Virus record (IMG/VR): IMGVR_UViG_3300009181_000033
Location: 233,895 to 297,894 of that record
DNA length: 64,000 nucleotides
Strand: one strand, 5' to 3'
This document shows positions 12,288 through 60,445 of the stretch, one piece after another (the first letter of the stretch is position 1; each line of letters starts with the position of its first letter). The translations under genes were made by a program, and so were the position numbers. The notes below the pieces were generated by a model. It had not been told where the DNA came from. It ran no database searches and saw only the letters and a program-made list of their open reading frames with translations.

Positions 12288-12318
12288 AAAAAGGACGGGA
12301 ACTTTCGTTCCCGTCCTT
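12288..12318 (-). terminator. Intrinsic terminator
   Basis: AAGGACGGGAAC-GAAA-GTTCCCGTCCTT-TTT. Confidence 0.85.
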
Positions 12319-12347
12319 GCCACATGTCAAAGCAAAATTAATATATT

Positions 12348-23025: not shown

Positions 23026-23883
23026 TTACTCCTTCGACTCCAATTCCTCTTTTAATCTGGAATATAACATAAATCTGGTAACGGTTGAATCGTCCACGTC
23101 TCCCAAGTTTTCTTGAATTAGGCACGATTTAACTTCATCAAGTTTGCTCTTCACATACTCGTTCTTTTGATCCTCGGTCTCGTATTGCTCTATGAGCTCC
23201 AATAAATTATCCTTGGCTTCATGTAGCTTCATCTTGATTGATGACATATCGTCAGAAGCAGTTGAAAAAGCGTACGCCCTTATGAGACTCTTCTGTTGTT
23301 CATTAAGCACAGAATCGTATTTTTCATTCAACTTCTTTGTCATAACCTTCATCAGCAATCTCGCTGAACCATTTGTGTCCTCGGTTATTGTTTGATCGAC
23401 AGGGGCTGACTTTTCAGTAACTAACCACTTCATCAATTGATCTTCATATTGTGCCATCTTCAAGAGATCTTTATTGGGAGATCTCCATTCATTCATCAAT
23501 GTTTGAATTGTGGCAAGCGCTCTATATTCATTAACATGTTGATCATAAAAATTATCATCATTAATGACGTGATTAATGTGCTTGATCAACAATGACTTTT
23601 CACGATCGATTGCTGCGTGATTCATGGACACAGCGGCAGACTTCGCTTCCCTGAGGATTGAGGCAGCCACGTGCTCGGAAGAAACAGTTGTCTTTACCAA
23701 AGAATTAATTAAACGAAATTCTTTATAAAGATTAGTTCCTGGTTTGTAGTGCCTCTTAAGGATCCTAAGGGCACCAGCAGACCTCTTTTTGTCATCCTCT
23801 ATCAAAGATTTTGAAATGGTCCTTACCAAGAACTCATAAAGAAGCATTGAATTTCTTTTCTTATTATGGTTCCTTCCGCTCAT
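23026..23883 (-). CDS. Hypothetical helical protein between portal and protease (probable prohead core component)
   Basis: HNKKRN N-terminus; occupies the position of T4 gp67/gp68. Confidence 0.6.
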   Translation of the reverse strand: MSGRNHNKKRNSMLLYEFLVRTISKSLIEDDKKRSAGALRILKRHYKPGTNLYKEFRLINSLVKTTVSSEHVAASILREAKSAAVSMNHAAIDREKSLLIKHINHVINDDNFYDQHVNEYRALATIQTLMNEWRSPNKDLLKMAQYEDQLMKWLVTEKSAPVDQTITEDTNGSARLLMKVMTKKLNEKYDSVLNEQQKSLIRAYAFSTASDDMSSIKMKLHEAKDNLLELIEQYETEDQKNEYVKSKLDEVKSCLIQENLGDVDDSTVTRFMLYSRLKEELESKE

Positions 23884-26800
23884 TTGTCACTCCCATCATT
23901 GATAAATACTTCTTCATTTTCATTTTCTTCTTCGAAATTTTCTGTAAGGGTTCGAGAATTTTGTTTCTGGCGTTGACCATCCATCATGTGTTGGAACTTT
24001 GGTGACATCGTCATTCTGCGAAGAGATGATGCAACATCACTCCCCATCATTGTTTTATGAACCCTAGATTCACCAAATGGATTTCCTAAATATGAATTCA
24101 TAAAGTCTTTGTCATAAGGATCAGACATTGATTTGGAATCGTGGCTCGTCATTTTTGCAAAATCAGGCTCATGAATCCTCGATGCACTATTGTGTTTTAT
24201 TCTTGCCCTGTTTCTAAGAACTCTGTCAAGTTGTTTTTGTGCCTTGACTGGGACAGTCACATCCTTTAAGCCGCCAAGCTTGACTGGGTAATCTTCTTCG
24301 TCGTCCGGATCATCGCCAGCTGTGATAAGATCAAGCTTGGGAGATTTTTGAATTGGATCGTCACTAGCGAATAGGTCACCGCCACCTTCTTCATCACCAC
24401 CGCCTTCATCGCCTCCGCCCCCAGCGGCATCACCAGAATCAACATCATCACCGCCCGAATCTTCTGGTTTGGCAGCCTCAATTGTTGCATCGATCATCTT
24501 TTCCTTAAGTCTCTGCTCGTCGATGGCGGCGATCTGTTCAGCGCTCAATCCCCATATTTCTTTACGAATAAATTCCTTGCTCATTTGACCTTCGGGGGCT
24601 GAGCCGGCTATCTCAAACTTCGCCCTCCAGAGCTCAAGCTTCTGTTGTTGTGCAATTGTTGAAGGGTTACTAAGTCTAAGGGTGAAGTTTTGAAGATCCT
24701 CTGAGTCAAATCCATTGGCATATAAATGAATAATTGCCAATTTGTTAAGCTCTGATATCATTGTCTTCTGAATGACATTGATAGTCCTGGAGAATCTAAT
24801 GTCTTCCTGTGCCAAAGTCGCCTTGCTGGAAAGGGCTTCGTCATAACCGAGATACGCTCTCGGTATCTTGAGCGCGGCGAACAACTTCTTTTGTATATAA
24901 GCAACGTCCTCTACGGCGGCTGCATTTTGACCGCCGGCCAAGGTGTCAATCTTGGTTCCTGACTCTCCACCGCGAACAGGAATGAAGTAGTCCTCATCAA
25001 CAGAAAGCGGATTATACCTCAAATCGACCCTGCCTGTTGTTCTATCAACAACCTGACTTGACCTAAGATTCTTCTTCTGTTCCTCGACGTACATCGGGAC
25101 ATTTTCCGGAGGAATATTAGCGACATCAATATAGAAAACCCTTCTCTCCGGCGCACGAACAACACGATAAACAAGCATGGCGTCCTCGATAAGGATGAGC
25201 TGGCGCCATATGCGGCGGGCAGGTTCGATGACAGAAGAACCGTAAGGAAGGAACATGTCATTGCCAAGAAGTCTGAAGTGTGTCACTTCCCAGTTTTCGA
25301 GCGTTCTATTCCCAAGAGTAACCCAGCGATATCGAACTGCCATGGGATCATTTGGATCATAATTCTCTTCTCGCTCTATCTCATTAACTGGAATTGGAAA
25401 GGCATTGATGACGCCATGTGTAGGCGAAACATCATTATAAAGAAACATGTCGCCGTATTTAACAAGGTTCCTGACCCAGGAGCGAAGATTGAACTCGACA
25501 TTTAATGTATTATAAAAGAGATCTTCTAAGATCTCCCTTATTTTTTCATTATCAGAATAAATGTGGAGTACTCTTCCTTTTTCATCTTGGGCACAAGTCT
25601 CATCTGCGTATATGTCAAGTGCTGCGGCGAGCTCGGGAGTATTGTGCGAAATGACAGTGTCTGTGGCAAAATTCTTGTATCCATCGACCGTTAAATCAAA
25701 GAGAGGAATGACACCATGATACTCAACAGATGCGACCTTGAGATTTTCATAATTGCTGGAGAAGTCCGTGTAATTCTTGTATCCATTGTCTTTTAATCTT
25801 TTCGAAACAATTTCAACAGAGGTGCCTAAAGAAGCAGCCAATTGTGACCTGGACATGCCCTTAGAAAAGGCAGAACAAATCTTATCGAATGTTAATGATT
25901 TAATATAACGTGGATTATTCCCACCATCATTATCCCATCCTGCATTGTGCCAATCTGGATTGTAGGCACGAGCAAAGGTCTCAAAGTTTTCGTATCCATG
26001 CTTTCGAAGTCTACGTTTGATGACGTTCGGATCTGTATCGAGCACCTCACACATCTTACGTGAGTTAAATCCAACTCTTTCGGCGATCTCGAGAATTCTA
26101 CCAAACGTAATGTCTTTACGCTCAGCAGGATTGTTTTCTGTCATAAACTTAGAATGATTGACTTTAAATTGTTGAATCCATTCAGAGTTTTGCTCGGACC
26201 ACTTGGCACCATTTAAGATTTTTGAGTGTAATTCTAGGTGGGCTTTTTCTGTCATCACCTGCAGATTTTCAGGCCTATTGTCGTGCTTGATGAAGTTGCA
26301 ATGATGCACTACTTCACCGTCAATCAGAGGTGAACCTTTCAACATTTCCCCAATGACTCTATGCTCTGCAACCCATCCATTCGTTTTGGAACGACGGTCC
26401 ATTGTGTAGATCCAGCGATAACCTTCACCGTCTTCCTTACAGCCATTGAAGAGATCTCGACGATAGAATGGCATCATTGCATCACCTGCCTTAAGATCTT
26501 CTATCTTACAGAAGGTGCCATCACGCTTCATAAGTCGGTGATTAGGAGTGCCGATTATTTTTTGACCATTATCGAATGTGACAGTGTATGCAGCATCGAC
26601 ACGTGTTTGACGAGCCTGTTTCCCAAAAGCGGGGACGATGCGACCTAAATTGTGATCATAGGCATACACCAAGAAAGTATGCTCCGGGTTGCTTTCGCAT
26701 TCCTGGGCCAGTTCTAAAACTGTCTTGTAACCCCCAGGAACTGCTATCTTTGTATCACCGTGAAGGCAATACTCCATCTCTCCGAAATCTTGATAACGCA

Positions 26801-27008
26801 TGAGGCGCTCGGAAAGATTATATGCATTTGCTGTAATCGTGGCATATGTGGGAGCCATCGATTTTTGGAAAAGCAAAGCGCCGCTGCTCTTTGTTTTATC
26901 AGCAACGGCTATTGTTGTGTCTAGATTTCTAAGCTTTCTTCGTACTACCGGCCCACTCCTAAAAAGCTTAGTTAATTTCTGAAATAAATTCTCGTTTTCT
27001 TTTGCCAT
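23880..27008 (-). CDS. Portal protein, T4 gp20-like, containing an intein
   Basis: RY.DF.EM...PELAAALDIYADE; LIEDAMLVYRVVRAPERRVFYIDV.N.P; EDYFIPVRG...TKIDTL.GG; YIQKKLFAALKIP; EDIRFSR. Confidence 0.95.
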   Translation of the reverse strand: MAKENENLFQKLTKLFRSGPVVRRKLRNLDTTIAVADKTKSSGALLFQKSMAPTYATITANAYNLSERLMRYQDFGEMEYCLHGDTKIAVPGGYKTVLELAQECESNPEHTFLVYAYDHNLGRIVPAFGKQARQTRVDAAYTVTFDNGQKIIGTPNHRLMKRDGTFCKIEDLKAGDAMMPFYRRDLFNGCKEDGEGYRWIYTMDRRSKTNGWVAEHRVIGEMLKGSPLIDGEVVHHCNFIKHDNRPENLQVMTEKAHLELHSKILNGAKWSEQNSEWIQQFKVNHSKFMTENNPAERKDITFGRILEIAERVGFNSRKMCEVLDTDPNVIKRRLRKHGYENFETFARAYNPDWHNAGWDNDGGNNPRYIKSLTFDKICSAFSKGMSRSQLAASLGTSVEIVSKRLKDNGYKNYTDFSSNYENLKVASVEYHGVIPLFDLTVDGYKNFATDTVISHNTPELAAALDIYADETCAQDEKGRVLHIYSDNEKIREILEDLFYNTLNVEFNLRSWVRNLVKYGDMFLYNDVSPTHGVINAFPIPVNEIEREENYDPNDPMAVRYRWVTLGNRTLENWEVTHFRLLGNDMFLPYGSSVIEPARRIWRQLILIEDAMLVYRVVRAPERRVFYIDVANIPPENVPMYVEEQKKNLRSSQVVDRTTGRVDLRYNPLSVDEDYFIPVRGGESGTKIDTLAGGQNAAAVEDVAYIQKKLFAALKIPRAYLGYDEALSSKATLAQEDIRFSRTINVIQKTMISELNKLAIIHLYANGFDSEDLQNFTLRLSNPSTIAQQQKLELWRAKFEIAGSAPEGQMSKEFIRKEIWGLSAEQIAAIDEQRLKEKMIDATIEAAKPEDSGGDDVDSGDAAGGGGDEGGGDEEGGGDLFASDDPIQKSPKLDLITAGDDPDDEEDYPVKLGGLKDVTVPVKAQKQLDRVLRNRARIKHNSASRIHEPDFAKMTSHDSKSMSDPYDKDFMNSYLGNPFGESRVHKTMMGSDVASSLRRMTMSPKFQHMMDGQRQKQNSRTLTENFEEENENEEVFINDGSDK
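25641..26768 (-). mobile_element. Intein (376 aa) with HNH homing endonuclease in the portal gene
   Basis: Block A CLHGDTKI; block B IIGTPNHRLM; block F/G LFDLTVDGYKNF..VISHN followed by Thr; internal EHR...VVHH.NFIKHDNRPENL..H. Confidence 0.93.
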
Positions 27009-40904: not shown

Positions 40905-42716
40905 TCAGTGTGTGTAACGGTTTTTGTCATAGATTTGTATTTTCACCAATTGCATTTTTTGATTATCTAAATTCATCAATTGCAAAAGATAATATGGAGA
41001 AGAATCAGCTGATACATTATCTGACCCGTTAACTATTCTAAACTCCTTCGCACCGCTCAAAACTTTTAGATACTCAGGATTAAAATACACTGTCATTTTA
41101 GTGTTTCCGTACCCTGTCAATTTGATACAATCCTTGAATGCATCCATTTTTAAATTCATGTTGGGGTATTGGCGGGGTGAATTTGCGTCGCAAACTACCT
41201 TCGAAACAAGTTTATTTTTATACGAATCAAATGTGACTAAATGTTGTGCAGAATAATTGGATATCATTCCATGCGCATCAACAGTGCAAATAGAATAAAT
41301 GTATGAAGAGGCAGTTGAAAATTCCTTGTCTATATAAAAATCATCATCAACATGTATGTAAATTGGAGTCGAAGATGTTTTTACCAAATTAGATAAGTCA
41401 CTTCTTGGTGTCCTGTTCCCATCAACTATTTCGCCAGTACCATATCTTAAGTTGGCATCACCGGCGTCAGATGTATCCCATGAGTATTGGGCAATCAATT
41501 CGAATGGTTCCTCAATGCTCTTTCTTCTCATGATCTGTATTTGTTTTATGTCGTCTTGAGTATTAACTGGCAATCCCCAGGATATTATTAGGTTGTTTTT
41601 CTGAAAATCGTATGAAAATTTAATGTCTTCGGGTGGTGGGGGAGGAATATACTCAAAGCACTCTATTGATTTTGAAATTGGCCTTGATGCAACAAGAACA
41701 TTTCCATAAGAAGACTCTTTGTTATCCTTGTCATAAATCAAGACACTCATTTCAGCAATAACGCTTAAGGAATAGATGTAGGTTTTTCCATATAGAATAT
41801 TTTTGTCTATGTAGAAATTTTTCTCAAAATCTTCTATATAAAATTCTTCTTCGAATTGAAATCCATCAGGTGTAACTAAATACCTTTTTAGAAGATATCC
41901 CCTCATATAAACAGAGCGATTATTTAATGTTGAACTATATTTCTTGGTTAATGGTAAATTGATCTGTTCAGGCCAGCCACCAGCCTTCGCAGCTATAGAA
42001 TTTTCATTTAAAAACTTGAAATTAACATTCTTTAATTTTGAACCAACAAACAAATCAGGAACAACAAAAGAATTCAATTGAGCATTGAGCGATAAGTTTT
42101 CTGATATTGAATTTAAAAATTCGCTTGTATCATGAGCTGACGAGGGCGCACCGGTACCATTGACTACCTTTAAACCCAATGAATTATCAGGAAAATCTGC
42201 TAGGCTTGTGTAAGCTTGAGCTATGCTAGCAAATTCTTTCTGTTGTTTCTCGCTATCCATATCAGTTTCTTTGGCAATGTCGCCGATAAGAGCAGCTGCC
42301 ATTTGAAAGACACTTTCCGTTCGAACGTTGTTAATTCTAGCTGCAACCTCTATGTCTTCACTCCCTTGTCGTATATCCTGAACATCTGAAAAAACAAATG
42401 AAACGTAATTGGGACTAAAATCATCTTCAAAGACTATTTTTGAGATGTTTTCTTTTATGTAATTTTTTTTTGTTTTTTGGGATCTGGGGTCAACAGGTCT
42501 ATCAAGTTCAAATTTTGATATTTGGGGTTTAAACCAAGAAATCTTGACATATCTTGGTAATGTTTCAGTAAGATTTCCTGACCGTGGACTATCCGGTCGG
42601 CGTGTTCTTTCATCGACGACATAAAAATTATAATTAAATGTTACATCAATTGATTTTACTTCGGGCACATTGACTATCGTAGAAGATGGTGATGCGTTAG
42701 ATTCTTTGCTAGCCAT
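40905..42716 (-). CDS. Hypothetical virion protein, possible FN3/Ig-like domains
   Basis: PPPPPEDIKF...ISW, YIYSLSV, YIYSICTVD patterns. Confidence 0.45.
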   Translation of the reverse strand: MASKESNASPSSTIVNVPEVKSIDVTFNYNFYVVDERTRRPDSPRSGNLTETLPRYVKISWFKPQISKFELDRPVDPRSQKTKKNYIKENISKIVFEDDFSPNYVSFVFSDVQDIRQGSEDIEVAARINNVRTESVFQMAAALIGDIAKETDMDSEKQQKEFASIAQAYTSLADFPDNSLGLKVVNGTGAPSSAHDTSEFLNSISENLSLNAQLNSFVVPDLFVGSKLKNVNFKFLNENSIAAKAGGWPEQINLPLTKKYSSTLNNRSVYMRGYLLKRYLVTPDGFQFEEEFYIEDFEKNFYIDKNILYGKTYIYSLSVIAEMSVLIYDKDNKESSYGNVLVASRPISKSIECFEYIPPPPPEDIKFSYDFQKNNLIISWGLPVNTQDDIKQIQIMRRKSIEEPFELIAQYSWDTSDAGDANLRYGTGEIVDGNRTPRSDLSNLVKTSSTPIYIHVDDDFYIDKEFSTASSYIYSICTVDAHGMISNYSAQHLVTFDSYKNKLVSKVVCDANSPRQYPNMNLKMDAFKDCIKLTGYGNTKMTVYFNPEYLKVLSGAKEFRIVNGSDNVSADSSPYYLLQLMNLDNQKMQLVKIQIYDKNRYTH

Positions 42717-45700
42717 TATGAAATTCCTAAAAATGGTTCGATGGTTATGAAATATTCGTCCATATACACATCATCAGGTGTAATGTCCCTTAATTTATAA
42801 AGAAATTTATCTTTATCCCTGTTGGATTTAGGCGCATGGGGAATTATAAATTTTTGATTCTTAAGAGAATCAATTTGTGGCTTGAGTTCAGCGAATGATT
42901 TGCCTGGCTCCATCATCGATGTGTCTATTATAAAATCATCTGGGTCAAAAATTATTGAAAATGTTCTATCGAACTTCCTGGGATATACGGCCTTCTTCAA
43001 TATTTGTGCTGGCCTAAGAATAAAAGTTTCATTATGCAAATAGGAAATAAGCGTACTGGTAACGTCTATTGTAGGTAGATTATTTTGATTCGTGGCAGCG
43101 GCAGCAGCATTTCTTTCTTGTTGAGATCCATTCACAGGCACTTCTCTTGTGACTCCTGTGACTGGATCAACATATGTTGTCCTATTTGTACCAGCACTGA
43201 CTCCTCCTGCTGTAGAAGCCAAGGAAGCAAATTTACCATAACCCTCATTCAAGTAAGAAAGCTCTTTTGACATGGGTTCATAATTATAATATCTAGTTTC
43301 ATCAATCGAAACGCCTGTCATCCATCTAATATATTCTTCCGCCAAGAAGCTTTTAGCATGATTCTCATAAATTTCAAGACTCTCAGAAGTGCTGAGGGAT
43401 GAGCCGTACTTTATAGCTATTTTTGGATCAGAAGCGTCAGTGTGCAATTCAAAACGGTCGCCCGTCCAATATTTTGTTGGTAACTCAAGCGGATTATTTG
43501 TTCCATTCTTCAATGTTGATGCATCCCAATTTCCAATGACTCGGGTTGGGAATCTATTGAGATCAAATAAATAACTCAGCGGTTTAAAAACCAAATATCT
43601 ATGCAATAAATCAATTTTAAATATTTTGATTCTTACAATATTTTTCTTAATGGATTCATCCGACGTAAAATCTTGACTGTCGTATGACATAAGATTTCTC
43701 ATCATTTTTGGTGGTATTCCCACAGAAATGATTCGCTTATTGTTTCCATCTTTCTTATAAAAAATCTCATTATTAAAATAAGTTTTCACAATAGGAAAAG
43801 AACAAATTTCCAAATCATTGACAGGAAGATAAGAACCAAATGGCAAATTTGCCATGGAGTTAGAATTAAAAGATGGAATTATGCTCTTTAATTTATTTTG
43901 ACCATCGTTTTCTTTTGATATTCTATCAGATATTTCAGAATATATGTAATTCGACATTATCATTTGCTCTTCTGTGCTAGACGCATTAAAGAGCGATATT
44001 TTTTGGTCAATAGTGAAATTATTATTTTCATAAAAATAAGGCAGCGTCTTATCGAGATAAGGTTTAAAATTATTGGACAATAATTCTATAAAACTATTGA
44101 TTTTATTAAGAGCGTGGGTGACAAAACCCTTTATCATAAAAACTTCAGAAAGCAATTCTTTCATTTCTTGTTTCATGTAGGTTTTTGCTTTAAAAAGATA
44201 TTTGTTAAAAACACCATTTTTATCGGCGGTAAAACCCCAAATTGTTGAATGATCAATTGGATTGCTTTTATTAAAAAAAGATGTCGTAAAAATAAATGTT
44301 GAATCACCAAAAGCATTGTTTAAATTTACGCCTTGGGCACCGGTGCCCACAGACCAATAATTTGTATTCTCAAGACTTCGATTTCTAAAGATTTCACTTG
44401 ACACTTTAAAGTTGCTCATTGTTGATGCCAGTTTTTTTGTTGCAACGTAAGCCATGTCCAGACTTTCATGTGTTAAACAAGAAATTGTCAGCATCATATT
44501 TGTCATGTATGCAACCATATAAACGTTCTTATCTATCCCAGAGTATTCTGTGTTTATGGGGTAGATGTTATATTCTTCCTTGAATGTTTGCATAAAGGTC
44601 AAAAGAATATTTGATTTTTCATAAAATATTTCTTTTTTTATTGTTTCTAATTCAAAAGCAAGATTTTGATCAAAAGCATTCACCCAAAAACTAGACACAT
44701 TTGATATTTCATCAAATGAATCAAGAGATTTTAGCTGATCAGATTGCCAATGACCACATAGCGAGGTCAAACTTTCCATAAGATTATCAACAGCATGTTT
44801 GTATAAGAAATTGCCCTCTGTCACAGAGGCCTCATCAAGAACAAAACATATACACATCACCCAGAGACTAACAGCTCCTCGGCGAGCGGCATGCCCTTTT
44901 ATAGGATCAGTTTGAAACATAGAACCGGCTATTTTTTTTATCAACATAGCAAAAAACCTATTATGGTTATCAGCCGGGGTCCAGTCGCTAAATTTGGATG
45001 TATCGGTTTTTATATTTTTTTTATCAGATATGTCCAAGATTTTAACATAACTTGTAAAAATACTTTTAAATCTTTGGTTTAGATATTGAGGTAAAAAATT
45101 TTCCTGGGCATTCTGGGAATTGTTGAGATCGTCATTGTAAGTGTTAACAAAATCCTCCAAGATCTTAGTGGTCTCGACAGCATCTTCGAGTCTCTTCTTT
45201 AACCTATTGATTCTACTTAAATCATAGGCATCACCATTTGCATTAATGTTCAATGATGTCTCGAGATAATATTCTCTACCTGTTGTAATTTTAGGCGACT
45301 GTGTGTCACCAAGTGGACTATTGTCCCTCTCAAAGGTAAAAACGCTATATTTATCTTGTCCGATTGATGCATATTCATGAGCAAGGCTCATGAGAGAAAG
45401 CCCCTTGCCAATTGGATTTTCTGGCATTTCAAAAGTTTTTTCAGGGACAACACCAACAAGATGGTCCCAAACTGATACGTTCATTCCGTCAGGAGCTGTT
45501 TCAAATCCTCTTGCTTTCAATGCGCTGGAATAATCATTGATTGTTTTACCATAACTCTTTTCCCTTTGTAAAACGTCAGATATTCTGGCCACTGCACGTG
45601 GAATGGCATCTTCAAAGGCTGTAGTATAATCCGTGCCATTCCAATTAACCGCCTCGGCAATCTCCTTGTTGTTTTTACCTCCGATTGGTCGATCTATAAA

Positions 45701-47416
45701 AATAGATTGTTTTTCGGTAAAAGTAAATAACTTTAAAAGTGGTTTCTCCACTTGCTCAGTGTATATAGATAAACTATCCTTTGTAGACAAACTTGATAAT
45801 GGATTAGTTGTGACAATATTGGCATATGTGTCTGGCATTTTAATGCCATTATTTATCCATAATGAATCTTTGGCCTGCAGGTTCTTATCAGAAGAGGCAA
45901 TAGAATTAAATGATGAATTGCTCGTCCCAATTGAAGAAACACTCAATGAAAATTTCAATTCATTCAGTGTTTTAATCCACAGTTCAGTATCAGGGAATGT
46001 TTTTATGCCTTGAGGTGTTGCTATGCCTTTTTTTATTAAATAGTCTTTGACGTTTTCATATTTCGAATTTCCAACCAATCTAATTCCTAGTCTAGCTAAT
46101 TCATTGGAAAATGAATTTTTTGATGGGCTTAGTTTAGCCAAATCTTCCTCTTCGGTTGGAAAATCTTCTTCTACAGGGTATTTGTCTTTCAGAGGCTTAT
46201 TAACATTGAGAGCAGCGTCAAGCTCCTTAAATTTTGGAAATATTTTATTTAAAAATGAATCTGTGACAATTGGCAAAGTTGCTTTAATGGAGTCTTGAGC
46301 CGGCTTAACCACTCTTTCTTTTAAATTTGTGCTATGAAGAACAGTTATTGCATTTTGGGCATTCAAAATCCTTGCATTTTCTTTGAGATTTAAAATGTCT
46401 CCAATTCGTGTTAAATCGCCTTTTTCATAAATTGGCAAAAATTCAGAATTCAATATTATGCTGGGCGCTTCATTTGGTAGACCAGAATATTTTAAAACCT
46501 TTATTTTTGAAGGAGTTGGGGCAGCTGACGTGTCTTTTTCTCGTGGTGATCGTGAAAATGGCGGTTTTGCTACTATTTTTTTACTTTCAATAACGTTTTT
46601 TGCTCTTTTTTCATCAAGATCCTTCAGGATTTGTTGATATCTTGTATCAAGACTTGGTTCTCTTGCAAGATCGCCTGTGGCAGCTGTACCCTCAGTTGCA
46701 CCTGCAGCTGCGCTGCCTACACCTGTGGCATCTGTACCTATGGCTGGGCCTTTTGTAGTTTTAGCTTTGGCTGCAGCTTCAGCTGCTGCAGCTTCAGCAG
46801 CCTTTCGACGCATAGCATCATTTGCAGCTGTCCCTGCCGTGCCTGTGGCAGCTGTACCCTCAGTTGCACCTGCAGCTGCGTTACCTGTACCTGTGGCAGC
46901 TGTGCCTGCTGTAGTTTTAGCTTTGGCTGCAGCATCTGCTTCAGCTTTTAATTTCATCTGTTCAGCTAAAGCGGCATTATTCGTTCCAGTTGATGGAGGG
47001 GAGGAACCATGAACATGAGAAGCAGTAGAATTAGATTCATTTTTTACATTTTTTTGTCCACTTCCTCCTTTTGTTTGTCCGGAAGGTGTTTTTGTAGTGG
47101 CGTTAGTCGCCTGCTTTTTTTTCTCTGCGTCAGCAGCAGCTTTTGCTGCTGCTGATTTTGCGGCAGCATCAGCAGCAGCTTTAGCAGTCGCTGCCTTTTC
47201 TTCATCTGTTCTCTTTTTTTCGTCTGCCTTTTTCTTTGCTTCTTCGGCTGCCCTTTTCTCTCGATCGGCTTTTTCCTTCTGAAGATCTTGAAGCCTTTTT
47301 TTGGCAGCATCTTCTGTCGCTTTTTTTGCGGCTGCATCCGCCGCGGGATCTTTTGCCGTTTTTGCAGCAGAATTTGTTCCTGATCTGCCTGCCCCTGTTC
47401 CTGTTCCTGCTGCCAT
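42716..47416 (-). CDS. Large hypothetical protein (1566 aa) with Ala/Lys/Thr low-complexity N-terminus
   Basis: Long ORF; about 250 aa TolA-like N-terminal region with internal repeats. Confidence 0.7.
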   Translation of the reverse strand: MAAGTGTGAGRSGTNSAAKTAKDPAADAAAKKATEDAAKKRLQDLQKEKADREKRAAEEAKKKADEKKRTDEEKAATAKAAADAAAKSAAAKAAADAEKKKQATNATTKTPSGQTKGGSGQKNVKNESNSTASHVHGSSPPSTGTNNAALAEQMKLKAEADAAAKAKTTAGTAATGTGNAAAGATEGTAATGTAGTAANDAMRRKAAEAAAAEAAAKAKTTKGPAIGTDATGVGSAAAGATEGTAATGDLAREPSLDTRYQQILKDLDEKRAKNVIESKKIVAKPPFSRSPREKDTSAAPTPSKIKVLKYSGLPNEAPSIILNSEFLPIYEKGDLTRIGDILNLKENARILNAQNAITVLHSTNLKERVVKPAQDSIKATLPIVTDSFLNKIFPKFKELDAALNVNKPLKDKYPVEEDFPTEEEDLAKLSPSKNSFSNELARLGIRLVGNSKYENVKDYLIKKGIATPQGIKTFPDTELWIKTLNELKFSLSVSSIGTSNSSFNSIASSDKNLQAKDSLWINNGIKMPDTYANIVTTNPLSSLSTKDSLSIYTEQVEKPLLKLFTFTEKQSIFIDRPIGGKNNKEIAEAVNWNGTDYTTAFEDAIPRAVARISDVLQREKSYGKTINDYSSALKARGFETAPDGMNVSVWDHLVGVVPEKTFEMPENPIGKGLSLMSLAHEYASIGQDKYSVFTFERDNSPLGDTQSPKITTGREYYLETSLNINANGDAYDLSRINRLKKRLEDAVETTKILEDFVNTYNDDLNNSQNAQENFLPQYLNQRFKSIFTSYVKILDISDKKNIKTDTSKFSDWTPADNHNRFFAMLIKKIAGSMFQTDPIKGHAARRGAVSLWVMCICFVLDEASVTEGNFLYKHAVDNLMESLTSLCGHWQSDQLKSLDSFDEISNVSSFWVNAFDQNLAFELETIKKEIFYEKSNILLTFMQTFKEEYNIYPINTEYSGIDKNVYMVAYMTNMMLTISCLTHESLDMAYVATKKLASTMSNFKVSSEIFRNRSLENTNYWSVGTGAQGVNLNNAFGDSTFIFTTSFFNKSNPIDHSTIWGFTADKNGVFNKYLFKAKTYMKQEMKELLSEVFMIKGFVTHALNKINSFIELLSNNFKPYLDKTLPYFYENNNFTIDQKISLFNASSTEEQMIMSNYIYSEISDRISKENDGQNKLKSIIPSFNSNSMANLPFGSYLPVNDLEICSFPIVKTYFNNEIFYKKDGNNKRIISVGIPPKMMRNLMSYDSQDFTSDESIKKNIVRIKIFKIDLLHRYLVFKPLSYLFDLNRFPTRVIGNWDASTLKNGTNNPLELPTKYWTGDRFELHTDASDPKIAIKYGSSLSTSESLEIYENHAKSFLAEEYIRWMTGVSIDETRYYNYEPMSKELSYLNEGYGKFASLASTAGGVSAGTNRTTYVDPVTGVTREVPVNGSQQERNAAAAATNQNNLPTIDVTSTLISYLHNETFILRPAQILKKAVYPRKFDRTFSIIFDPDDFIIDTSMMEPGKSFAELKPQIDSLKNQKFIIPHAPKSNRDKDKFLYKLRDITPDDVYMDEYFITIEPFLGIS
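46674..46934. repeat. Internal duplication (AAAKAKTT...AAAGATEGTAATG x2)
   Basis: cctgtggcagctgtaccctcagttgcacctgcagctgcg and tgtagttttagctttggctgcagc each occur twice. Confidence 0.85.
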
Positions 47417-51482: not shown

Positions 51483-52877
51483 CTAAAGAATCTTTGAAGC
51501 AAGTGTTGCCAATTCAGATCTCTCTCCCTTTAGCAGTGTTACGTGACCTGATATTGCAAATGGCTTGAATTTTTCTATTGCATAAGTCAAACCATTTGTG
51601 AACGTGTCAACATGAACGTTGTCAATTTGTTCTATATCGCCGGTTAAAACTATTTTGGTTCCATCACCTGCTCGAGTAACAATAGTTTTTAACTCATGCA
51701 TGGATAGATTTTGAGCTTCATCAATTATCATAAATGCATTGGGAATTGATCTACCCCTAATGAAGGAAATTGCTTCGATCTCTATAAGGCCCTTTTGTTG
51801 CATTAATTCAAGATAGGGATCTTTAAATCCACCAGGCTGTTGTTCGGAGCTCTTTTTTCTATTATTCATGCTTTGTTTCTTCAAAGAAGAGCCAAGCAAG
51901 TATTCAAGATTGTCCCTTATTGGAGCAATCCATGGCTCCATTTTTTCCTCCAAAGTCCCAGGAAGAAAACCAATATCTCGACCAACGGGTTGCACTGGTC
52001 TAGAAACTATTAACTTTTGATATATCGGTTTTTTTCCCAATGAATCAAGCTGTTCAAGACCCGCTGCTAGAGCCAACAATGTTTTTCCGCAGCCTGCTCT
52101 TCCGGTAAGGGTCATTAACTTAACTTCAGGATTTAACAATAAATCCATGGAAAAAACTTGTTCTTTATTTCTACACCTTATGCCAAAAACATTTTCATGT
52201 TTTTGCACATGTACCAAACTGCCATCAGCTTGATTTCTGGCCAGGGCCGAATTTGTCGTATTTCCAGCGCTATTGATAGATTTTAGAACGACTATTTGAT
52301 TGGGAAAAAATGCCTCTTGAGAAACATCGGAAGTGATCATCTTTTTTTCTTGATAAAAAGAATCAACAATTTCCTCCGTCGTTTCTACAACTTTTACGCC
52401 TGTATACAGAGAATCAACATTGTCAGAAACTCTATTGCTCAAATAGTCTTCTGCTTGAATTCCAAGAGAAGAACACTTTATCCTGATATTAATATCCTTG
52501 GAAATTAATATGACATCTGGGTCAACTTCCTTCATTTGAAGGATGAACCCAATGATCATATTATCAACAGAGGAACCGTATCCCAAATCAGAAGGCAAAA
52601 GATCCTTGTGTTCTCGTGAACAAGAAATAATTTTTAACTTGCCTCCACCAGGTAGATCAATTCCTTCCTTGAAATTTTGATCTCCTGACACGGATAAATC
52701 ATTTAGTTTTCTGGTGACCTCTCTGCAATTTCTACCGACCTCATCGGATCTAATCTTATGTTTGTCCAATTCCTCTAGAACCATCATGGGAATGATGAGG
52801 TCGTTATCTTCAAAATTTCTAAAACAATTAGGGTCACTCAATAAAACGTTTGTGTCTAAGATGTATGTTTTTTTCAT
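51483..52877 (-). CDS. phoH: PhoH-family ATPase with N-terminal PIN domain
   Basis: YILDTNVLL..VLEELD..DN.I..SKDIN.RIK; GRAGCGKT; IGFLPG; RGRSI; IIDEAQN; GDIEQID; ERSELA. Confidence 0.93.
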   Translation of the reverse strand: MKKTYILDTNVLLSDPNCFRNFEDNDLIIPMMVLEELDKHKIRSDEVGRNCREVTRKLNDLSVSGDQNFKEGIDLPGGGKLKIISCSREHKDLLPSDLGYGSSVDNMIIGFILQMKEVDPDVILISKDINIRIKCSSLGIQAEDYLSNRVSDNVDSLYTGVKVVETTEEIVDSFYQEKKMITSDVSQEAFFPNQIVVLKSINSAGNTTNSALARNQADGSLVHVQKHENVFGIRCRNKEQVFSMDLLLNPEVKLMTLTGRAGCGKTLLALAAGLEQLDSLGKKPIYQKLIVSRPVQPVGRDIGFLPGTLEEKMEPWIAPIRDNLEYLLGSSLKKQSMNNRKKSSEQQPGGFKDPYLELMQQKGLIEIEAISFIRGRSIPNAFMIIDEAQNLSMHELKTIVTRAGDGTKIVLTGDIEQIDNVHVDTFTNGLTYAIEKFKPFAISGHVTLLKGERSELATLASKIL

Positions 52878-52936
52878 TTGATTTAAGTCGCAGTTTTTAT
52901 ACAATTTATGTTCTACGACAAACTATAGCATATTAT

Positions 52937-53215
52937 ATGACACAAATCAATAAATCAGACAATAAAACTAAGTTAAATGTTTTAGATAACACCACGTGCT
53001 ACGAAGCAATTGATAAGAATAAAACCACATGTCAAAGAAAAAATTGCCACCAGTGGATTAATCACCCTGGTGGTAAAAATTGCATTCATGTAACAACTCA
53101 ACAGGGAGCACTAACCCTAAGAGAAATAGGAAAAATATATGGCCTTACCAGAATGAGAATATGCCAAATAGAAAAAAATATCTATCAAAAAATAAGAACG
53201 TCCATACTCACTTAA
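52937..53215 (+). CDS. Stand-alone sigma-70 region-4 HTH protein with 4-Cys N-terminal domain
   Basis: LTLREIGKIYGLTRMRICQIEKNIYQKIR matches the region 4.2 pattern TLEEIG..F.VTRERIRQIE.KAL.KLR. Confidence 0.8.
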   Translation: MTQINKSDNKTKLNVLDNTTCYEAIDKNKTTCQRKNCHQWINHPGGKNCIHVTTQQGALTLREIGKIYGLTRMRICQIEKNIYQKIRTSILT

Positions 53216-53552: not shown

Positions 53553-53780
53553 TCACTGCTTTGTTTTCTTGGGCTTTGCTGGCTTTTTTGCGGCTTCAGC
53601 TTTCTCAAGCTCAATTGTAGACTTGACTAAATCCCTGGCATTGGCTTGCAACTGTCGAAGGCCTTTTCGAGCTCTGACACCAGCAGCAGCCACCCCGCGA
53701 GCATTCTTCAAAACATCGGACTCTATGGCTTCAATTAGAGCCTTAAGCTCTGTCCACTTGGTAAAAACATCTAAACTCAT
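53553..53780 (-). CDS. Histone H1-like nucleoid protein (Hc1 family)
   Basis: D..K..RG..AAGVRARKGL..L core plus Lys/Pro/Ala tail; SD AGGAGG. Confidence 0.75.
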   Translation of the reverse strand: MSLDVFTKWTELKALIEAIESDVLKNARGVAAAGVRARKGLRQLQANARDLVKSTIELEKAEAAKKPAKPKKTKQ

Positions 53781-57113: not shown

Positions 57114-58226
57114 TCACACATGTAAATAACCCATTTTTTCAATGGCGCCATTGAAAGATTCAAAATATCGATTTGCAACTACTTCAGGACGTATTCCATT
57201 CGAACAAATGGAATTTAATCGACGTATTGCCTCGTCAAACTCAATCGAATTGCATGCGTATGATGCATCATCCGGTAGAGCCACCTCAACGCAGGAAGAA
57301 GATAGGCACTTTATGCGCTTTATTAGCGTCTCTGTCAGCTCAGGATTTTTTTCCATTTTTTCTTTGAGTTGCTTGATCAATATTTTTGTAGATTTTTTTG
57401 AGGCGGCATTCTTCAAGATTACCTTGTTTGATTGAAAGTTGCAGCTTTCCACCATTTTCAAAGTCGACATATCAATCGAAGAGATGAGTTGTCCCTTGAG
57501 GCTTGACACCACATCGGTGTTTGATGCTGTTGCTATATCCACCAAAGTATTAACACCTTCAAGGTCATATGTGATTTGATATGGAAAAAGCACCAGGTTT
57601 CCTCGATCATTGTTGACCTTGATTGTGTTAGCAACATCATCAGATAATCCCCTGCAAAAAAGTGCGCAGGGGATTTTGTTGTCGGAAAGAAATGTTAAAA
57701 CATGATGAATTTCAGATACGCTTTCAACATATCCATCGATGCACAAAACAGAAACATTCTTCAATAATTGCGGTCGAATATTGACCAGTGATTTTGCTGG
57801 AAATGAATAACCGTCATAAGCTTCAATGTAAAAATTGTGATTTGATGATTTTTTCAAAATCACACTTGTTGAAGATCCGGACATGTCAATGATGTTTTCC
57901 ATGATTTTGCGGTTGCGATGATTCATGAATCGAAAAGAGTTGATCACGGACTTTTTGGTGACTGGGGTGTCAGATGTGTCTTCTATTTTTTGGCCGACAA
58001 AAAGCCTGAGAAACATGTTCCCGGATCCAGGAGAAGTCTTCTCGGCCGTAATAAAATTAGAAAGCAAAATTTCATAAATCTTTGACTGGGATATATCAGT
58101 GGGTTTAATCCGAAGAATGTGCTGGATGTGCTTGAGTGGTCCGTCTTTTGAAAGTGATTTTTCAACATCCAAATTTTCTCTTATGATTTTTCTTACTTCT
58201 TCAACAATGACCGGCAATTCACTCAT
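57114..58226 (-). CDS. Divergent, truncated chaperonin (GroEL/Cpn60 apical-domain-like)
   Basis: DGYSF...VLCIDGYVESVSEIHHVL....ALFCRGLSDDVANTIKVN..RG.L...LVDIA...VVSS..G resembles GroEL apical/intermediate segments; no GDGTT. Confidence 0.55.
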   Translation of the reverse strand: MSELPVIVEEVRKIIRENLDVEKSLSKDGPLKHIQHILRIKPTDISQSKIYEILLSNFITAEKTSPGSGNMFLRLFVGQKIEDTSDTPVTKKSVINSFRFMNHRNRKIMENIIDMSGSSTSVILKKSSNHNFYIEAYDGYSFPAKSLVNIRPQLLKNVSVLCIDGYVESVSEIHHVLTFLSDNKIPCALFCRGLSDDVANTIKVNNDRGNLVLFPYQITYDLEGVNTLVDIATASNTDVVSSLKGQLISSIDMSTLKMVESCNFQSNKVILKNAASKKSTKILIKQLKEKMEKNPELTETLIKRIKCLSSSCVEVALPDDASYACNSIEFDEAIRRLNSICSNGIRPEVVANRYFESFNGAIEKMGYLHV

Positions 58227-58310
58227 GGGCTTATTCTACACACAACGAATTGCAAGTGGTTAATGCAAATTTACTTTTTGCATGTACAAGTCTAATTGCA
58301 GGTAGTATTC

Positions 58311-58456
58311 TAATTAATAATTAGAAGAATTAATTGGATCCAATTAGATACAATTAGAAGAATTAATTAGATACAATTAGATACAATTAGAAGAATTAAT
58401 TAGATACAATTGGATCCAATTAGATAGAATTAGATCCAATTAAGAGGCTAATTAGA
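58311..58456. repeat. AATT-phased iteron-like array at the strand switch (putative origin or regulatory region)
   Basis: Units AATTAGATAC, AATTAGAAG-AATT, AATTGGATCC, AATTAGATAG, AATTAGATCC; palindrome AATTGGATCCAATT occurs twice. Confidence 0.85.
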
Positions 58457-60445
58457 ATGAATTTAAAAGAACCAATTTTTGTAAATCCCAATAAGCTAAT
58501 AGAAGAAAATTCTGAGATTATTTTTGTTGCTGACGTGTTCGTTGAGGATTATGTCGGTGGAGCCGAATTAACGTCGGATGCAATCATCCAGGAATCACCA
58601 TTTGTGGTGCAAAAGCTACACTCAAAAGATGTAAATCTTGCAACTTTACAACAGGGAATTAATAAATTTTGGATATTTGGAAATTTTGCACAACTCAATC
58701 CAGAATTAATTCCTTCAATTGTGGCAAATTTGAAATACTCCGTCCTGGAGTATGACTATAAATACTGCAAATTTAGATCACCTGAAAAACACGTTGCAGC
58801 CGAAGGCACGTGCGATTGTGAAAGTAAAATCAATGGAAAATTGGTTTCCGCTTTTTACTTTGGATCCCAGGCTTTATGGTGGATGTCAGAACAACAAAAA
58901 AACAAATACACCAACTTATTTCCGTTTCTGCTGGAGAAAGATAATGTAGTTTTATCCAGCGTATTTTCCAAAGAAACTCTTGGAAAATTGAGACACTTGA
59001 GGGAGCAATCAAATCCAAAAAAGGGTTGGATTGTTTTAGGATCCACTTCTTGGGTGAAGGGTTTTGAAAATGCAAAAAAATGGTGTGAAGACAATCACAA
59101 AGAATATGAAGTTGTATGGAATTTGAGCTATGATGAAGTGCTAGCAAAACTTTCCACCTCTGAGGGCTTTGTCTACCTACCGGCCGGAGCCGATACGTGT
59201 CCAAGAATGGTGATTGAAGCTAAGTTATTGGGTTGTGAGCTTCACATGAACGACCATGTTCAACATGCAAAAGAAGAGTGGTTCAATACAGACGATTTAG
59301 ATTCTATCCAAGATTATCTCTACACAGCGCCAGACATATTCTGGAAGGCAATCAAATTGATCAAAAATCATAAACCAACCATTAGCGGTTACATCACTAC
59401 TTACAATTGTATTGCACAGGAATATCCATTTGAAAGAAGTATTAATTCCATGTTGCAATTTTGTGATGAGGTCTGTGTGGTCGACGGAGGTTCCACCGAT
59501 ACCACACCCGAGACTCTCTTTGACTTACAGATGAAGAACTCTCCAGAAGAGTCACGAGTCAAATTGATCGAGGACCTGAAGAGAGAGAAGGGTGAGACTC
59601 TTCCTATTTCCGTTCTCCACGAGGCACTCAACGGTATTTCACGAGTCAAAGTGAAGACGATATCCCGTGATTGGACTCATCCTCGACATGCAGTTTTTGA
59701 TGGCATGCAGAAGGCAGAAGCACGAAAGATGTGTACTGGCGAGTTCTGTTGGCAAATGGATTCTGACGAAATAGTACACGAGAAAGACGCTCATAAAATC
59801 ATTGAATTGTGTCAAAATATTCCAAAGAACGTCGACATTGTTTGTCTCCCGGTTGTGGAATATTGGGGAGGGCCCGAAAAAGTTAGACTTGACATTCAGC
59901 CTTGGAAATGGAGACTCAGCAGAAATTCTTCACACATCACCCATGGAATCCCAGTCGAACTTCGCCGCAATGATGTAAATGGTGACCTCTATGCACTCGA
60001 AGGTACCGATGGTTGTGACATGATCAACACAGAAACGGGTGAGAGATTGCCACATGTTACGTTCCACAACACAGAGACAGAAACAATTCGTAGAGCAGCA
60101 GTTTTAGGTGATGAGAATGCCATTAAAGCCTATCAGGATTGGTTCAATAAAGTTGTTGAAAATCTTCCTGGTGTATTTCATTATTCATGGTATGACATTC
60201 CGAGAAAAATTCGAACCTATAAGAATTATTGGACAAAACACTGGAATTCCCTTTACAACAAATCAATGAAAGACACAGCAGAATCAAACATGATGTTTGA
60301 TTTACCGTGGTCAGAAGTTTCTGAAGAGATGATAGAAGATTTGGCAAAAAATCTAAAAGAAAAAACAGGCGGTTGGATTTGGCACGGCAAATGGAAAGGC
60401 CAGCAAATTCCCCACCTGACAATTAACACAACGGAGCCAAAATGA
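58457..60445 (+). CDS. Two-domain glycosyltransferase (GT-B-like + GT2/GT-A)
   Basis: GGAELT, KG, DTCPRMVIEAKLLG; then ISGYITTYN..VVDGGSTD...QMDSDE. Confidence 0.85.
   Translation: MNLKEPIFVNPNKLIEENSEIIFVADVFVEDYVGGAELTSDAIIQESPFVVQKLHSKDVNLATLQQGINKFWIFGNFAQLNPELIPSIVANLKYSVLEYDYKYCKFRSPEKHVAAEGTCDCESKINGKLVSAFYFGSQALWWMSEQQKNKYTNLFPFLLEKDNVVLSSVFSKETLGKLRHLREQSNPKKGWIVLGSTSWVKGFENAKKWCEDNHKEYEVVWNLSYDEVLAKLSTSEGFVYLPAGADTCPRMVIEAKLLGCELHMNDHVQHAKEEWFNTDDLDSIQDYLYTAPDIFWKAIKLIKNHKPTISGYITTYNCIAQEYPFERSINSMLQFCDEVCVVDGGSTDTTPETLFDLQMKNSPEESRVKLIEDLKREKGETLPISVLHEALNGISRVKVKTISRDWTHPRHAVFDGMQKAEARKMCTGEFCWQMDSDEIVHEKDAHKIIELCQNIPKNVDIVCLPVVEYWGGPEKVRLDIQPWKWRLSRNSSHITHGIPVELRRNDVNGDLYALEGTDGCDMINTETGERLPHVTFHNTETETIRRAAVLGDENAIKAYQDWFNKVVENLPGVFHYSWYDIPRKIRTYKNYWTKHWNSLYNKSMKDTAESNMMFDLPWSEVSEEMIEDLAKNLKEKTGGWIWHGKWKGQQIPHLTINTTEPK

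What the first reader, a model, noticed from the sequence alone, without database searches (positions are those of the whole stretch)
58311..58456. AATT-phased modular repeat array at the genome strand switch
About 145 bp are built almost entirely from AATT-initiated modules: AATTAGAAG-AATT x3, AATTAGATAC x4, AATTGGATCC x2, AATTAGATAG and AATTAGATCC. The roughly 10-bp AATT spacing matches one helical turn, and the 14-bp palindrome AATTGGATCCAATT occurs twice. The array lies in the only major divergent intergenic region and runs right up to the ATG of the GT operon, which has no SD. Inference: a replication origin with iterons and curved DNA, a packaging site, or a variable-length regulatory switch for the glycan operon.
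Basis: partly seen in the sequence, partly recalled or inferred. Interest (0 to 1): 0.65.

Follow-up and report, generated by a model that had tools for sequence, protein, structure and literature searches.

The report
AT-rich repeat array before glycan operon
A real, 33-bp-unit repeat array sits just before the first sugar-transferase gene of a freshwater T4-like giant phage. It is the easiest-to-melt DNA in the genome, and it most likely belongs to that operon's promoter control region rather than being a proven replication origin.

Summary
The array is real. Window 58312-58456 holds 17 AATT in 145 bp (genome mean 1.2, next best 8). It is a 33-bp unit (one 13-bp plus two 10-bp AATT modules) repeated 3.4 times, found once in the 297,894-bp genome of a freshwater T4-like jumbo phage.

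Two claims need correcting. An AAGAGG Shine-Dalgarno lies 9 nt before the ATG. The skew minimum is explained by gene orientation.

The array is the least stable 100-140-bp duplex in the genome and about the third most curved. The same spacer, before the conserved first glycosyltransferase gene, is the genome-wide stability minimum in 7 of 10 large relatives. There it carries lineage-specific short repeats with a shared T(A/T)AGAT(C/A) core, usually just upstream of a TGwACA-N16/17-TAnnnT promoter-like site. Here the last modules form such a site (GATACA-N16-TAGAAT, 26 nt before the ATG).

- **Best reading (about 0.42):** an expanded, curved, AT-rich upstream control region or protein-binding platform for the glycan-operon promoter, growing by 33-bp slippage. 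K-mer depths hint that 2- and 3-unit alleles coexist.
- **Replication origin (about 0.25):** not excluded, but unsupported by skew, flanking genes or the closest relatives.
- **Packaging site:** no support.

The parts
57114..58226 (-). Leftward gene, 370 aa, GroEL-apical-domain-like protein
   Evidence: ORF list. Matches phrog_5725 'chaperonin groEL' at 1.7e-11. Weak match to the Cpn60 apical domain 5cdj. Homologs at 30-41% identity in relatives L003-L006.
58233..58238 (-). -10-like TAGAAT, 6 nt before the ATG of the leftward gene (leaderless geometry typical of this phage)
   Evidence: Read from the sequence. The same -10-N6-ATG geometry occurs at 9 or more other promoters of the genome.
58260..58283 (-). 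Vestige (7 codons) of the start of a 173-208-aa coiled-coil/TM gene. Relatives have this gene here; this phage has lost it.
   Evidence: tblastn finds no homolog in the genome. Alignment A1 shows the conserved TTTTT-CATGTACA block.
58283..58311 (+). P1: promoter-like TGTACA-N17-TATTCT (alternative -10 TAGTAT at 58303-58308). It is positionally orthologous to the GT promoter of the closest relatives and would read into the array.
   Evidence: Pattern scan. Alignment A1 has an invariant G-T-A...T block. Relatives show TGTACA/TATACA-N16/17-TAGATT.
58291..58315 (-). Two inverted copies of the heptamer AATTAGA (58291-58297 and 58309-58315), bracketing the TAGTAT hexamer
   Evidence: Genome-wide heptamer positions.
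58312..58441 (+). The array: 33-bp units at 58319, 58352 and 58385, plus a partial unit at 58418-58441. It holds ten direct AATTAGA heptamers.
   Evidence: Module and repeat structure. Least stable 100- and 140-bp duplex of the genome. Third most curved of 5,955 windows.
58332..58345 (.). Perfect 14-bp palindrome AATTGGATCCAATT, copy 1
58408..58421 (.). Perfect 14-bp palindrome, copy 2, 76 bp from copy 1. The two copies give the array partial dyad symmetry: arms 58331-58356 and 58397-58422 are 85% complementary.
58403..58430 (+). P2: promoter-like GATACA-N16-TAGAAT made from the last modules. The predicted start is near 58437, giving a leader of about 20 nt.
   Evidence: This is the same geometry as the gene-proximal promoter-like sites of 23 of 36 relatives. 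The C-to-G change in the module at 58418 creates the only -10 hexamer in the array that ends in T.
58442..58447 (+). Shine-Dalgarno AAGAGG, 9 nt before the ATG
58457..60445 (+). First gene of the rightward glycan cluster: 662 aa, with a GT1-like N-terminal domain and a GT2 domain
   Evidence: PF00535. Atlas neighbours include GT1 families. 78 homologous loci at 37-68% identity.

Best explanation
The array is the locally expanded form of a conserved, very AT-rich control region. This region precedes the first glycosyltransferase gene of the glycan cluster throughout a clade of freshwater T4-like jumbo phages.

**Shown**
- The array is a 33-bp unit repeated about three times.
- Each unit carries 10-bp-phased AATTAGA/AATTGGA sites.

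**Inferred mechanism**
- The array lies directly upstream of, and partly forms, a sigma-70-type promoter, P2 (GATACA-N16-TAGAAT). P2 drives a short SD-bearing leader into the operon.
- The phased AATT modules make the DNA intrinsically bent and easy to open, and they offer about a dozen same-face sites for a DNA-binding protein. Candidates are RNA polymerase alpha-CTD, a host nucleoid protein, or a conserved phage protein such as the nearby Hc1-like or sigma-R4-like gene product.
- Unit number would then set the strength or timing of transcription of the operon, and possibly of the divergent gene.
- The array grows and shrinks by slipped-strand or unequal exchange of 33-bp units, so its length varies between and probably within populations.
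For: - **Linkage to the gene.** In 44 dereplicated relatives, the spacer before the GT homolog carries local short repeats in 40% of loci, against 8% of other spacers.
- **Shared motif.** These spacers are enriched about 5-13-fold for TAGAT/AGATC/TAAGAT-type words compared with other spacers. They hold twice as many as their own dinucleotide shuffles, z=9-12. This phage's modules (TTAGATA/C, GGATCC) fit that core.
- **Position relative to the promoter.** In 23 of 36 relatives with a TGwACA-N15-18-TAnnnT site, the site lies 5-40 nt from the start codon and the motif cluster lies upstream of it. P2 has this geometry here.
- **Independence from strand switching.** The association holds whether the upstream gene is divergent or co-oriented.
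- **Physical properties.** It is the lowest nearest-neighbour duplex stability of the genome: -102.4 kcal/mol per 100 bp, against a mean of -133.5 (sd 8.3). It is the third most curved of 5,955 windows.
- **Conservation of the stability minimum.** The orthologous spacer is the genome-wide stability minimum in 7 of 10 large relatives, third in one, and about 31st and 55th in the other two.
- **Origin of the array.** The left 85 bp aligns with the whole 57-78-bp spacer of the closest relatives, and the array starts where their short leader starts. So the array is an add-on, not the core element.
- **Copy-number variation.** In the source run the loop unitig has depth 7.7, the twice-used 38-mer 21.2 and the flanks 15.5. 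This fits a roughly 1:1 mix of 2- and 3-unit alleles better than a uniform coverage dip.
Against: - No transcription data exist; no RNA run holds the phage. P1 and P2 are consensus matches only.
- If P1 rather than P2 is the active promoter, the array is a transcribed leader, not an upstream element.
- Curvature is not conserved: the spacer is in the top 1% in G003 and G004 but ordinary in G001 and G002.
- The curvature parameters were recalled from memory. Their sign was calibrated only on the A4T4/T4A4 control.
- No binding protein has been identified, and none of the immediate neighbours is a recognisable DNA-binding protein.
- The shared motif was chosen from the same data on which it was then tested.
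- The copy-number inference rests on two depth figures.
Confidence: 0.42

Rival explanations
1. Replication origin. The modules are iterons and the array is the unwinding element, opened by an initiator or by an R-loop from promoter P1 reading into it, as at T4 oriF/oriG or oriE.
For: - The phage is T4-like: gp23, gp20, gp17, gp15, sheath, SbcCD and primase are present.
- The T4 review PMC3016281 states three things. oriF/oriG are a promoter plus an A+T-rich unwinding element. oriE has evenly spaced 12-nt repeats and an early promoter. Active origins lie near transcriptional divergence.
- The array is the least stable duplex in the genome.
- The orthologous spacer is the minimum in 7 of 10 relatives, including the one-strand genome G003.
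- P1 points into the array.
- The array is a single cluster in the genome.
Against: - The skew minimum at the array vanishes when transcription-linked skew is removed. No residual GC3/AT3 extreme lies at the locus in any of 6 genomes, and G003 skew is monotonic.
- The flanking genes are a GT and a GroEL-like protein, not an initiator.
- The closest relatives have only 57-78 bp here, without an array.
- In most relatives the promoters point away from the repeat cluster.
- The annotated T4 oriE/F/G are not stability minima (z 1.0-1.95), and the T4 'iterons' are coding repeats of gp5.
- The modules are 10-13 bp and contiguous, unlike the 17-22-bp spaced iterons of plasmids and lambda (own knowledge).
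Confidence: 0.25
2. Functionless slippage product. An unconstrained AT-rich spacer has expanded by tandem duplication and has no effect on the phage.
For: - The units are 93% identical, so the expansion is recent.
- The closest relatives lack the array.
- The module sequence is unique to this phage in IMG/VR; the 17-mer gives only single chance matches.
- Copy number is probably polymorphic.
- Contigs of relatives often break in this spacer.
Against: - Repeats recur at the same locus across lineages at 50-60% protein identity and share a core motif.
- A spacer of about 200 bp is kept at this place in otherwise compact genomes (median spacer 56 bp).
- The palindromic variant arose twice, at mirror positions.
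- The single module change that creates TAGAAT lies at promoter spacing.
Confidence: 0.17
3. Transcribed 5' leader. P1 is the active promoter, and the array is a leader of about 140 nt whose long imperfect hairpin or repeated AU-rich sites control translation or stability of the GT mRNA.
For: - P1 is the positional ortholog of the relatives' promoter.
- In the closest relatives (L007, L009, L011) the small repeats lie downstream of that site.
- The leader RNA folds to -25.6 kcal/mol, z -4.67 against shuffles.
- T4-type phages use RNA-level repressors such as RegA and gp32 (own knowledge).
Against: - In 23 of 36 relatives the repeats lie upstream of the gene-proximal promoter-like site.
- No Rfam family matches.
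- The fold follows trivially from palindromic AATT/GGATCC cores.
- The -35 to TAGTAT spacing is only 14 nt. The 17-nt alternative has a weak -10 (TATTCT).
Confidence: 0.1
4. Packaging (pac/cos) site, physical genome end, or a plasmid-type partition centromere.
For: - Short-repeat arrays occur near the ends of some phage genomes and at parC-type centromeres (own knowledge).
- Contigs of 4 relatives end within 340 bp upstream of the GT gene.
Against: - The terminase is T4-type, which implies headful packaging without fixed ends (own knowledge).
- The terminase gene is 29 kb away.
- The 123-bp terminal repeat of the record lies 5.5 kb from the array.
- No ParR/ParM/ParA-like gene is adjacent.
- The contig breaks are explained by the repeats themselves.
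Confidence: 0.04

Closest known systems
Intrinsically curved / UP-like A+T-rich DNA upstream of strong phage and bacterial promoters (phased A-tracts, rrnB P1 UP element; own knowledge)
   Same: Lies directly upstream of a sigma-70-like -35/-10 pair. AATT is phased near one helical turn. Predicted curvature is in the top 0.05% of the genome. The DNA is very A+T-rich.
   Different: It is built from exact tandem 33-bp units rather than irregular A-tracts, and it extends to about -125. It contains two perfect 14-bp palindromes. Its effect on transcription is untested.
Bacteriophage T4 oriE 'iterons' and oriF/oriG promoter-plus-unwinding-element origins (PMC3016281)
   Same: The phage is T4-type. 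The repeats are evenly spaced and short. The site lies next to a promoter-like site, at a transcriptional divergence with a skew shift, and has an A+T-rich stretch downstream of P1.
   Different: It is not syntenic with any T4 origin. The T4 iterons lie inside gene 5 coding sequence. T4 origins are not stability minima. No replication-linked skew is seen here. The geometry is not conserved in relatives.
Operator or centromere arrays of contiguous 7-11-bp repeats bound by small RHH/wHTH proteins (R1 and pSK41 parC, omega heptads of pSM19035, tubC; own knowledge)
   Same: About a dozen contiguous sites, direct and inverted, with a period of roughly one helical turn. They lie immediately upstream of an operon and overlap its promoter.
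   Different: The operon does not start with a small DNA-binding autoregulator, and no partition NTPase is nearby. The downstream genes are glycosyltransferases.
Promoter-region tandem-repeat contingency loci (repeat-number-dependent promoter strength in Haemophilus, Neisseria and Mycoplasma; own knowledge)
   Same: A tandem repeat in or next to a promoter of surface-glycan genes. Unit number is probably polymorphic within one population.
   Different: The unit is 33 bp rather than 1-7 bp. The host is a lytic-type T4-like phage, not a bacterium. On/off switching has not been shown.

Membership tests
Iteron-type replication origin (plasmid, lambda, T4 oriE-like) | Cluster of evenly spaced direct repeats | tested here: met
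   Ten direct AATTAGA heptamers at 10/13-bp spacing within a 33-bp unit x3.4. The repeats are shorter and more contiguous than classic 17-22-bp iterons.
Iteron-type replication origin (plasmid, lambda, T4 oriE-like) | Adjacent or overlapping initiator gene | tested here: not met
   The flanking genes are a GT1-like/GT2 protein and a GroEL-apical-like protein. The small neighbours have no Pfam or PHROG match.
Iteron-type replication origin (plasmid, lambda, T4 oriE-like) | A+T-rich unwinding element | tested here: met
   Least stable 100- and 140-bp window of the genome. The property is conserved in 7 of 10 relatives.
Iteron-type replication origin (plasmid, lambda, T4 oriE-like) | Replication-linked strand asymmetry or coverage peak | tested here: not met
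   The raw cumulative skew minimum lies at 291-292 kb. No residual GC3/AT3 extreme remains at the locus after removing transcription direction, in 6 genomes. Coverage along the genome is not available from contigs.
Iteron-type replication origin (plasmid, lambda, T4 oriE-like) | Supports replication initiation | not testable with these tools
   Needs infected cells or a plasmid replication assay.
T4 oriF/oriG-type R-loop origin | [quoted passage not shown] | tested here: inconclusive
   P1 (58283-58311) points into the array but is only a consensus match. In 23 of 36 relatives the promoter-like site lies downstream of the repeat cluster and points away from it.
Curved / UP-like upstream promoter element | Lies between about -40 and -150 of a promoter | tested here: met
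   The array at 58312-58402 lies upstream of the predicted P2 -35 at 58403-58408. The promoter itself is predicted, not mapped.
Curved / UP-like upstream promoter element | Helically phased A/T tracts giving intrinsic curvature | tested here: met
   End-to-end/contour ratio 0.669 against a mean of 0.956 (sd 0.034), rank 3 of 5,955. AA/TT 10-11-bp periodicity ranks about 30 of 29,776. Among relatives the spacer is curved in G003 and G004 only.
Curved / UP-like upstream promoter element | Raises transcription of the adjacent promoter | not testable with these tools
   No RNA run holds the phage.
RHH/wHTH operator or parC-type centromere array | Contiguous short repeats upstream of an operon whose first gene is the cognate small DNA-binding protein | tested here: not met
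   The repeats are present, but the first gene is a 662-aa glycosyltransferase and no ParR/ParM/ParA/TubR-like neighbour is found.
Repeat-number contingency locus | Copy-number polymorphism within a population | tested here: inconclusive
   The k=31 graph has a loop. The loop unitig has depth 7.7, the shared 38-mer 21.2 and the flanks 15.5, which fits about half the genomes lacking one unit. There are only two figures and no spanning reads.
Dam/GATC epigenetic switch of glycosyltransferase operons (gtr/pap type) | Clustered GATC sites plus a GATC methyltransferase | tested here: not met
   The array has three GATC sites. GATC is enriched in relatives' spacers (1.15 against 0.51 per 100 bp). 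But the genome has no D12-class methyltransferase and its GATC frequency is neutral at 0.95. The host is unknown.
pac/cos packaging site | Defined cleavage site near the terminase genes, or read-start pile-up | not testable with these tools
   Only contigs were available. The T4-type terminase gene is 29 kb away.

The most novel reading that the evidence does not exclude
The repeat-bearing, minimum-stability spacer before the first glycan gene could be the conserved primary replication origin of an uncultured clade of freshwater T4-like jumbo phages. It would combine an unwinding element with initiator sites of T(A/T)AGAT(C/A) type, and the 33-bp array of this phage would be a lineage-specific iteron expansion. 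That would make an origin predictable from sequence alone in a group where none is known.
Probability: 0.22. Interest if true: 0.65.

Novelty: new variant of a known kind. Interest (0 to 1): 0.45.

Why it matters
Control regions and origins of environmental jumbo phages are essentially unmapped. This work defines a sequence-recognisable landmark shared by a whole clade. It is the genome's least stable, repeat-bearing spacer, fixed in front of the first gene of a roughly 19-kb glycan-synthesis cluster.

If it tunes that cluster, repeat number would be a simple, fast-evolving dial on phage-directed glycosylation. If it is an origin, it would be the first candidate for this clade. Either way it gives a short, testable DNA target (about 230 bp) and two conserved candidate binding proteins.

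It also warns that assemblies of these phages tend to break or mis-count at this spot.

Tried and rejected
- **GenBank phage search:** a nucleotide search of 5 kb around the array found nothing.
- **Rfam:** a permissive scan of 57900-58800 found no family.
- **Array 17-mer in IMG/VR:** 29 single chance matches and no other array.
- **Metagenome-contig scan with the 370-aa protein:** returned only the source contig, which is identical across the array, plus distant relatives. No close strain was available for copy-number comparison.
- **Skew as an origin test:** rejected, because it follows gene orientation.
- **'Lowest duplex stability means origin':** tested on T4 and rejected as a rule. oriE/F/G rank 66th-247th in 99 kb.
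- **Curvature model:** the first implementation failed the A4T4/T4A4 control. The tilt sign was corrected before use.
- **Dam-type switch:** no D12 methyltransferase in the genome.
- **Array as a decayed remnant of the lost 173-aa gene:** rejected. The vestige lies to the left of the array and there is no tblastn similarity.
- **PDB sequence search of the GT:** no match.

Full report
**What is there**

The higher-order structure is a 33-bp unit: one 13-bp module AATTAGAAGAATT followed by two 10-bp modules AATTrGATmC. The unit is repeated at 58319, 58352 and 58385, with a partial fourth copy. TRF gives 3.4 copies, 93% matches and score 191.

- The recurring core is the heptamer AATTAGA. There are ten direct copies in the array and two inverted copies at 58291 and 58309.
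- The two perfect 14-bp palindromes (58332 and 58408) lie at mirror positions. They give the array partial dyad symmetry.
- The region has 17 AATT in 145 bp. The genome mean is 1.24 and the runner-up window has 8.
- The modules occur nowhere else in the genome.
- It is the strongest intergenic tandem repeat of the genome.

Two side claims fail. AAGAGG lies 9 nt before the ATG, and SD-like words precede 41% of genes. The genome also has many small strand switches, although this one is the main one.

**Where it is**

The window is the last 64 kb of a 297,894-bp IMG/VR virus record with a 123-bp terminal overlap. The phage occurs in freshwater metagenomes.

It is a T4-type myovirus. It has a gp23 capsid protein, a gp20 portal with an intein, a gp17 terminase, gp15, sheath proteins, SbcCD and a primase.

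- To the left of the array lies a GroEL-apical-like 370-aa gene.
- To the right begins a glycan cluster of about 19 kb: a bifunctional GT1-like/GT2, GT2, GT2, GT11, an FkbM methyltransferase, GDP-mannose dehydratase and further GT1s.

**Is it an assembly artefact?**

Logan k=31 contigs of the probable source run cover every part of the array exactly, but they break inside it.

- One contig ends at 58370 and the next starts at 58382.
- A 55-nt unitig specific to the middle unit has depth 7.7.
- A 38-nt unitig that occurs twice in the assembled array has depth 21.2.
- The flanks have depth 15.5.

This is a loop in the graph, so the unit number is not verified. The three depths fit a roughly equal mix of two- and three-unit alleles, which predicts 7.8 and 23.3. 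A uniform coverage dip predicts 7.7 and 15.4, a poorer fit.

An independent sample (X2) holds 58407-58557, and its contigs stop at 58310. The array is therefore real, and its length is probably variable.

**Relatives**

The 662-aa GT has 78 homologous loci in IMG/VR at 37-68% identity.

- The spacer before it shows local short repeats in 40% of loci, against 8% of other spacers. The units are lineage-specific; L041, for example, has a 14-bp unit x8 plus a 10-bp unit x10.
- These spacers share an over-represented core of TAGAT/AGATC/TAAGAT type. It is 5-13-fold enriched over other spacers. It is twofold enriched over the spacers' own shuffles, z=9-12, though the motif was chosen post hoc. This phage's modules fit that core.
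- The closest relatives (64-68% identity) have only 57-78 bp here.
- Alignment shows that the non-repeat left 85 bp of our spacer corresponds to their whole spacer. It includes a 24-nt vestige of a 173-aa gene that this phage has lost. The array begins where their short leader begins.

**Promoters**

The genome has a clear promoter class, GTGCAAA...GGTAnnnT-N6-ATG, and a second class, TGwACA-N16/17-TAnnnT.

- In 23 of 36 relatives a site of the second class lies 5-40 nt before the GT start, with the motif cluster upstream of it.
- Here two such sites exist. P1 (58283-58311) is positionally orthologous to the closest relatives' site and reads into the array. P2 (58403-58430) is formed by the last modules, 26 nt before the ATG. 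A unique C-to-G module change creates its TAGAAT hexamer.

**Physical properties**

- The array is the least stable 100- and 140-bp duplex of the genome.
- Under a wedge model calibrated on the A4T4/T4A4 control, it is the third most curved of 5,955 windows.
- The orthologous spacer is the genome-wide stability minimum in 7 of 10 large relatives. These include a genome with all genes on one strand and two GC-rich ones. It ranks third in another.
- Curvature is conserved in only two of four relatives tested.

**Origin test**

- The cumulative GC and AT skew minima fall at the array. In the one-strand relative, however, skew is monotonic.
- After removing the transcription-linked component, no genome shows a residual extreme at the locus.
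- In T4 itself the annotated oriE, oriF and oriG are not stability minima, and the oriE iterons are coding repeats of gp5.
- The T4 literature does describe promoter-plus-unwinding-element origins and iterons near transcriptional divergence (PMC3016281).

The origin reading therefore stays open but has no positive support beyond A+T-richness and repeats.

**Verdict**

- **Upstream control region (0.42).** The array is most likely an expanded, bent, easily opened control region or protein-binding platform of the glycan-operon promoter, evolving by 33-bp slippage.
- **Origin (0.25).**
- **Neutral expansion (0.17).**
- **Transcribed leader (0.10).** The RNA fold has z -4.67 and there is no Rfam match.
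- **Packaging site or centromere (0.04).**

The conserved Hc1-like and sigma-R4-like gene pair lies 1.6-14 kb upstream-side of the locus in all six genomes. These two proteins are the obvious candidates to test for binding.

Noticed in passing
window 23880-27008 (-): The T4-type portal gene (gp20) is interrupted by an intein with an HNH endonuclease domain.
   Followed up: no
genome G000 38-165 kb (outside the window), e.g. 38686, 65851, 70287, 93757, 163205: A sharply conserved promoter class, GTGCAAA-N~11-GGTAnnnT followed by exactly 6 nt and ATG. This implies leaderless or near-leaderless mRNAs. A second class, TGwACA-N16/17-TAnnnT-N6-ATG, also occurs.
   Followed up: partly
window 58260-58283 (-); L003 5426-5947, L004 5418-5942, L005 5218-5844: Relatives carry a 173-208-aa coiled-coil protein with a C-terminal membrane helix between the GroEL-like gene and the GT gene. 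This phage has lost it and keeps only a 7-codon vestige of its start.
   Followed up: yes
window 52850-53215 (+) and 53601-53756 (-): A sigma-70 region-4-like gene and an Hc1 (histone H1-like) gene form a divergent pair. The pair is conserved on the upstream side of the GT locus in all six genomes examined. Among the control genomes, Hc1 matches only Bacteroides, which hints at a Bacteroidota host.
   Followed up: partly
G004:C1:119332-119676 and G007:C1:137462-139351: The sigma-R4-like homolog of G004 has two in-frame TGA codons. The GT homolog of G007 has one TGA and one TAA. These may be broken genes, sequencing errors or recoding.
   Followed up: no
L010, L060, L013, L044 (contig ends 1, 138, 216 and 337 nt upstream of the GT start): Contigs of relatives end inside this spacer far more often than expected: 4 of 10 upstream-truncated loci, against about 0.6 expected. 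Repeats breaking the assemblies is the likely cause.
   Followed up: partly
window 57114-58226 (-): A 370-aa protein resembles only the apical domain region of GroEL/Cpn60. It is an odd truncated chaperonin-like gene that is conserved in relatives.
   Followed up: no
window 12007-12109 and 19550-19682: Coding tandem repeats: a 6-bp unit x17 inside ORF 11658-12323, and a 57-bp unit x2.3 inside ORF 18459-20528. The 16-20 kb segment is also much more GC-rich (0.54) than the rest of the window.
   Followed up: no
window 46507-46660 (genome about 280401), inside ORF 42716-47416: This is the most curved window of the genome and has the strongest 10-11-bp AA/TT periodicity. It lies within a 1,566-aa ORF of unknown function, in a stretch with strong AT skew.
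   Followed up: no
T4 AF158101 79427-79541 (L201): The 'iterons' of T4 oriE coincide with the 24-nt coding repeats of the gp5 C-terminal region. [quoted passage not shown]
   Followed up: yes
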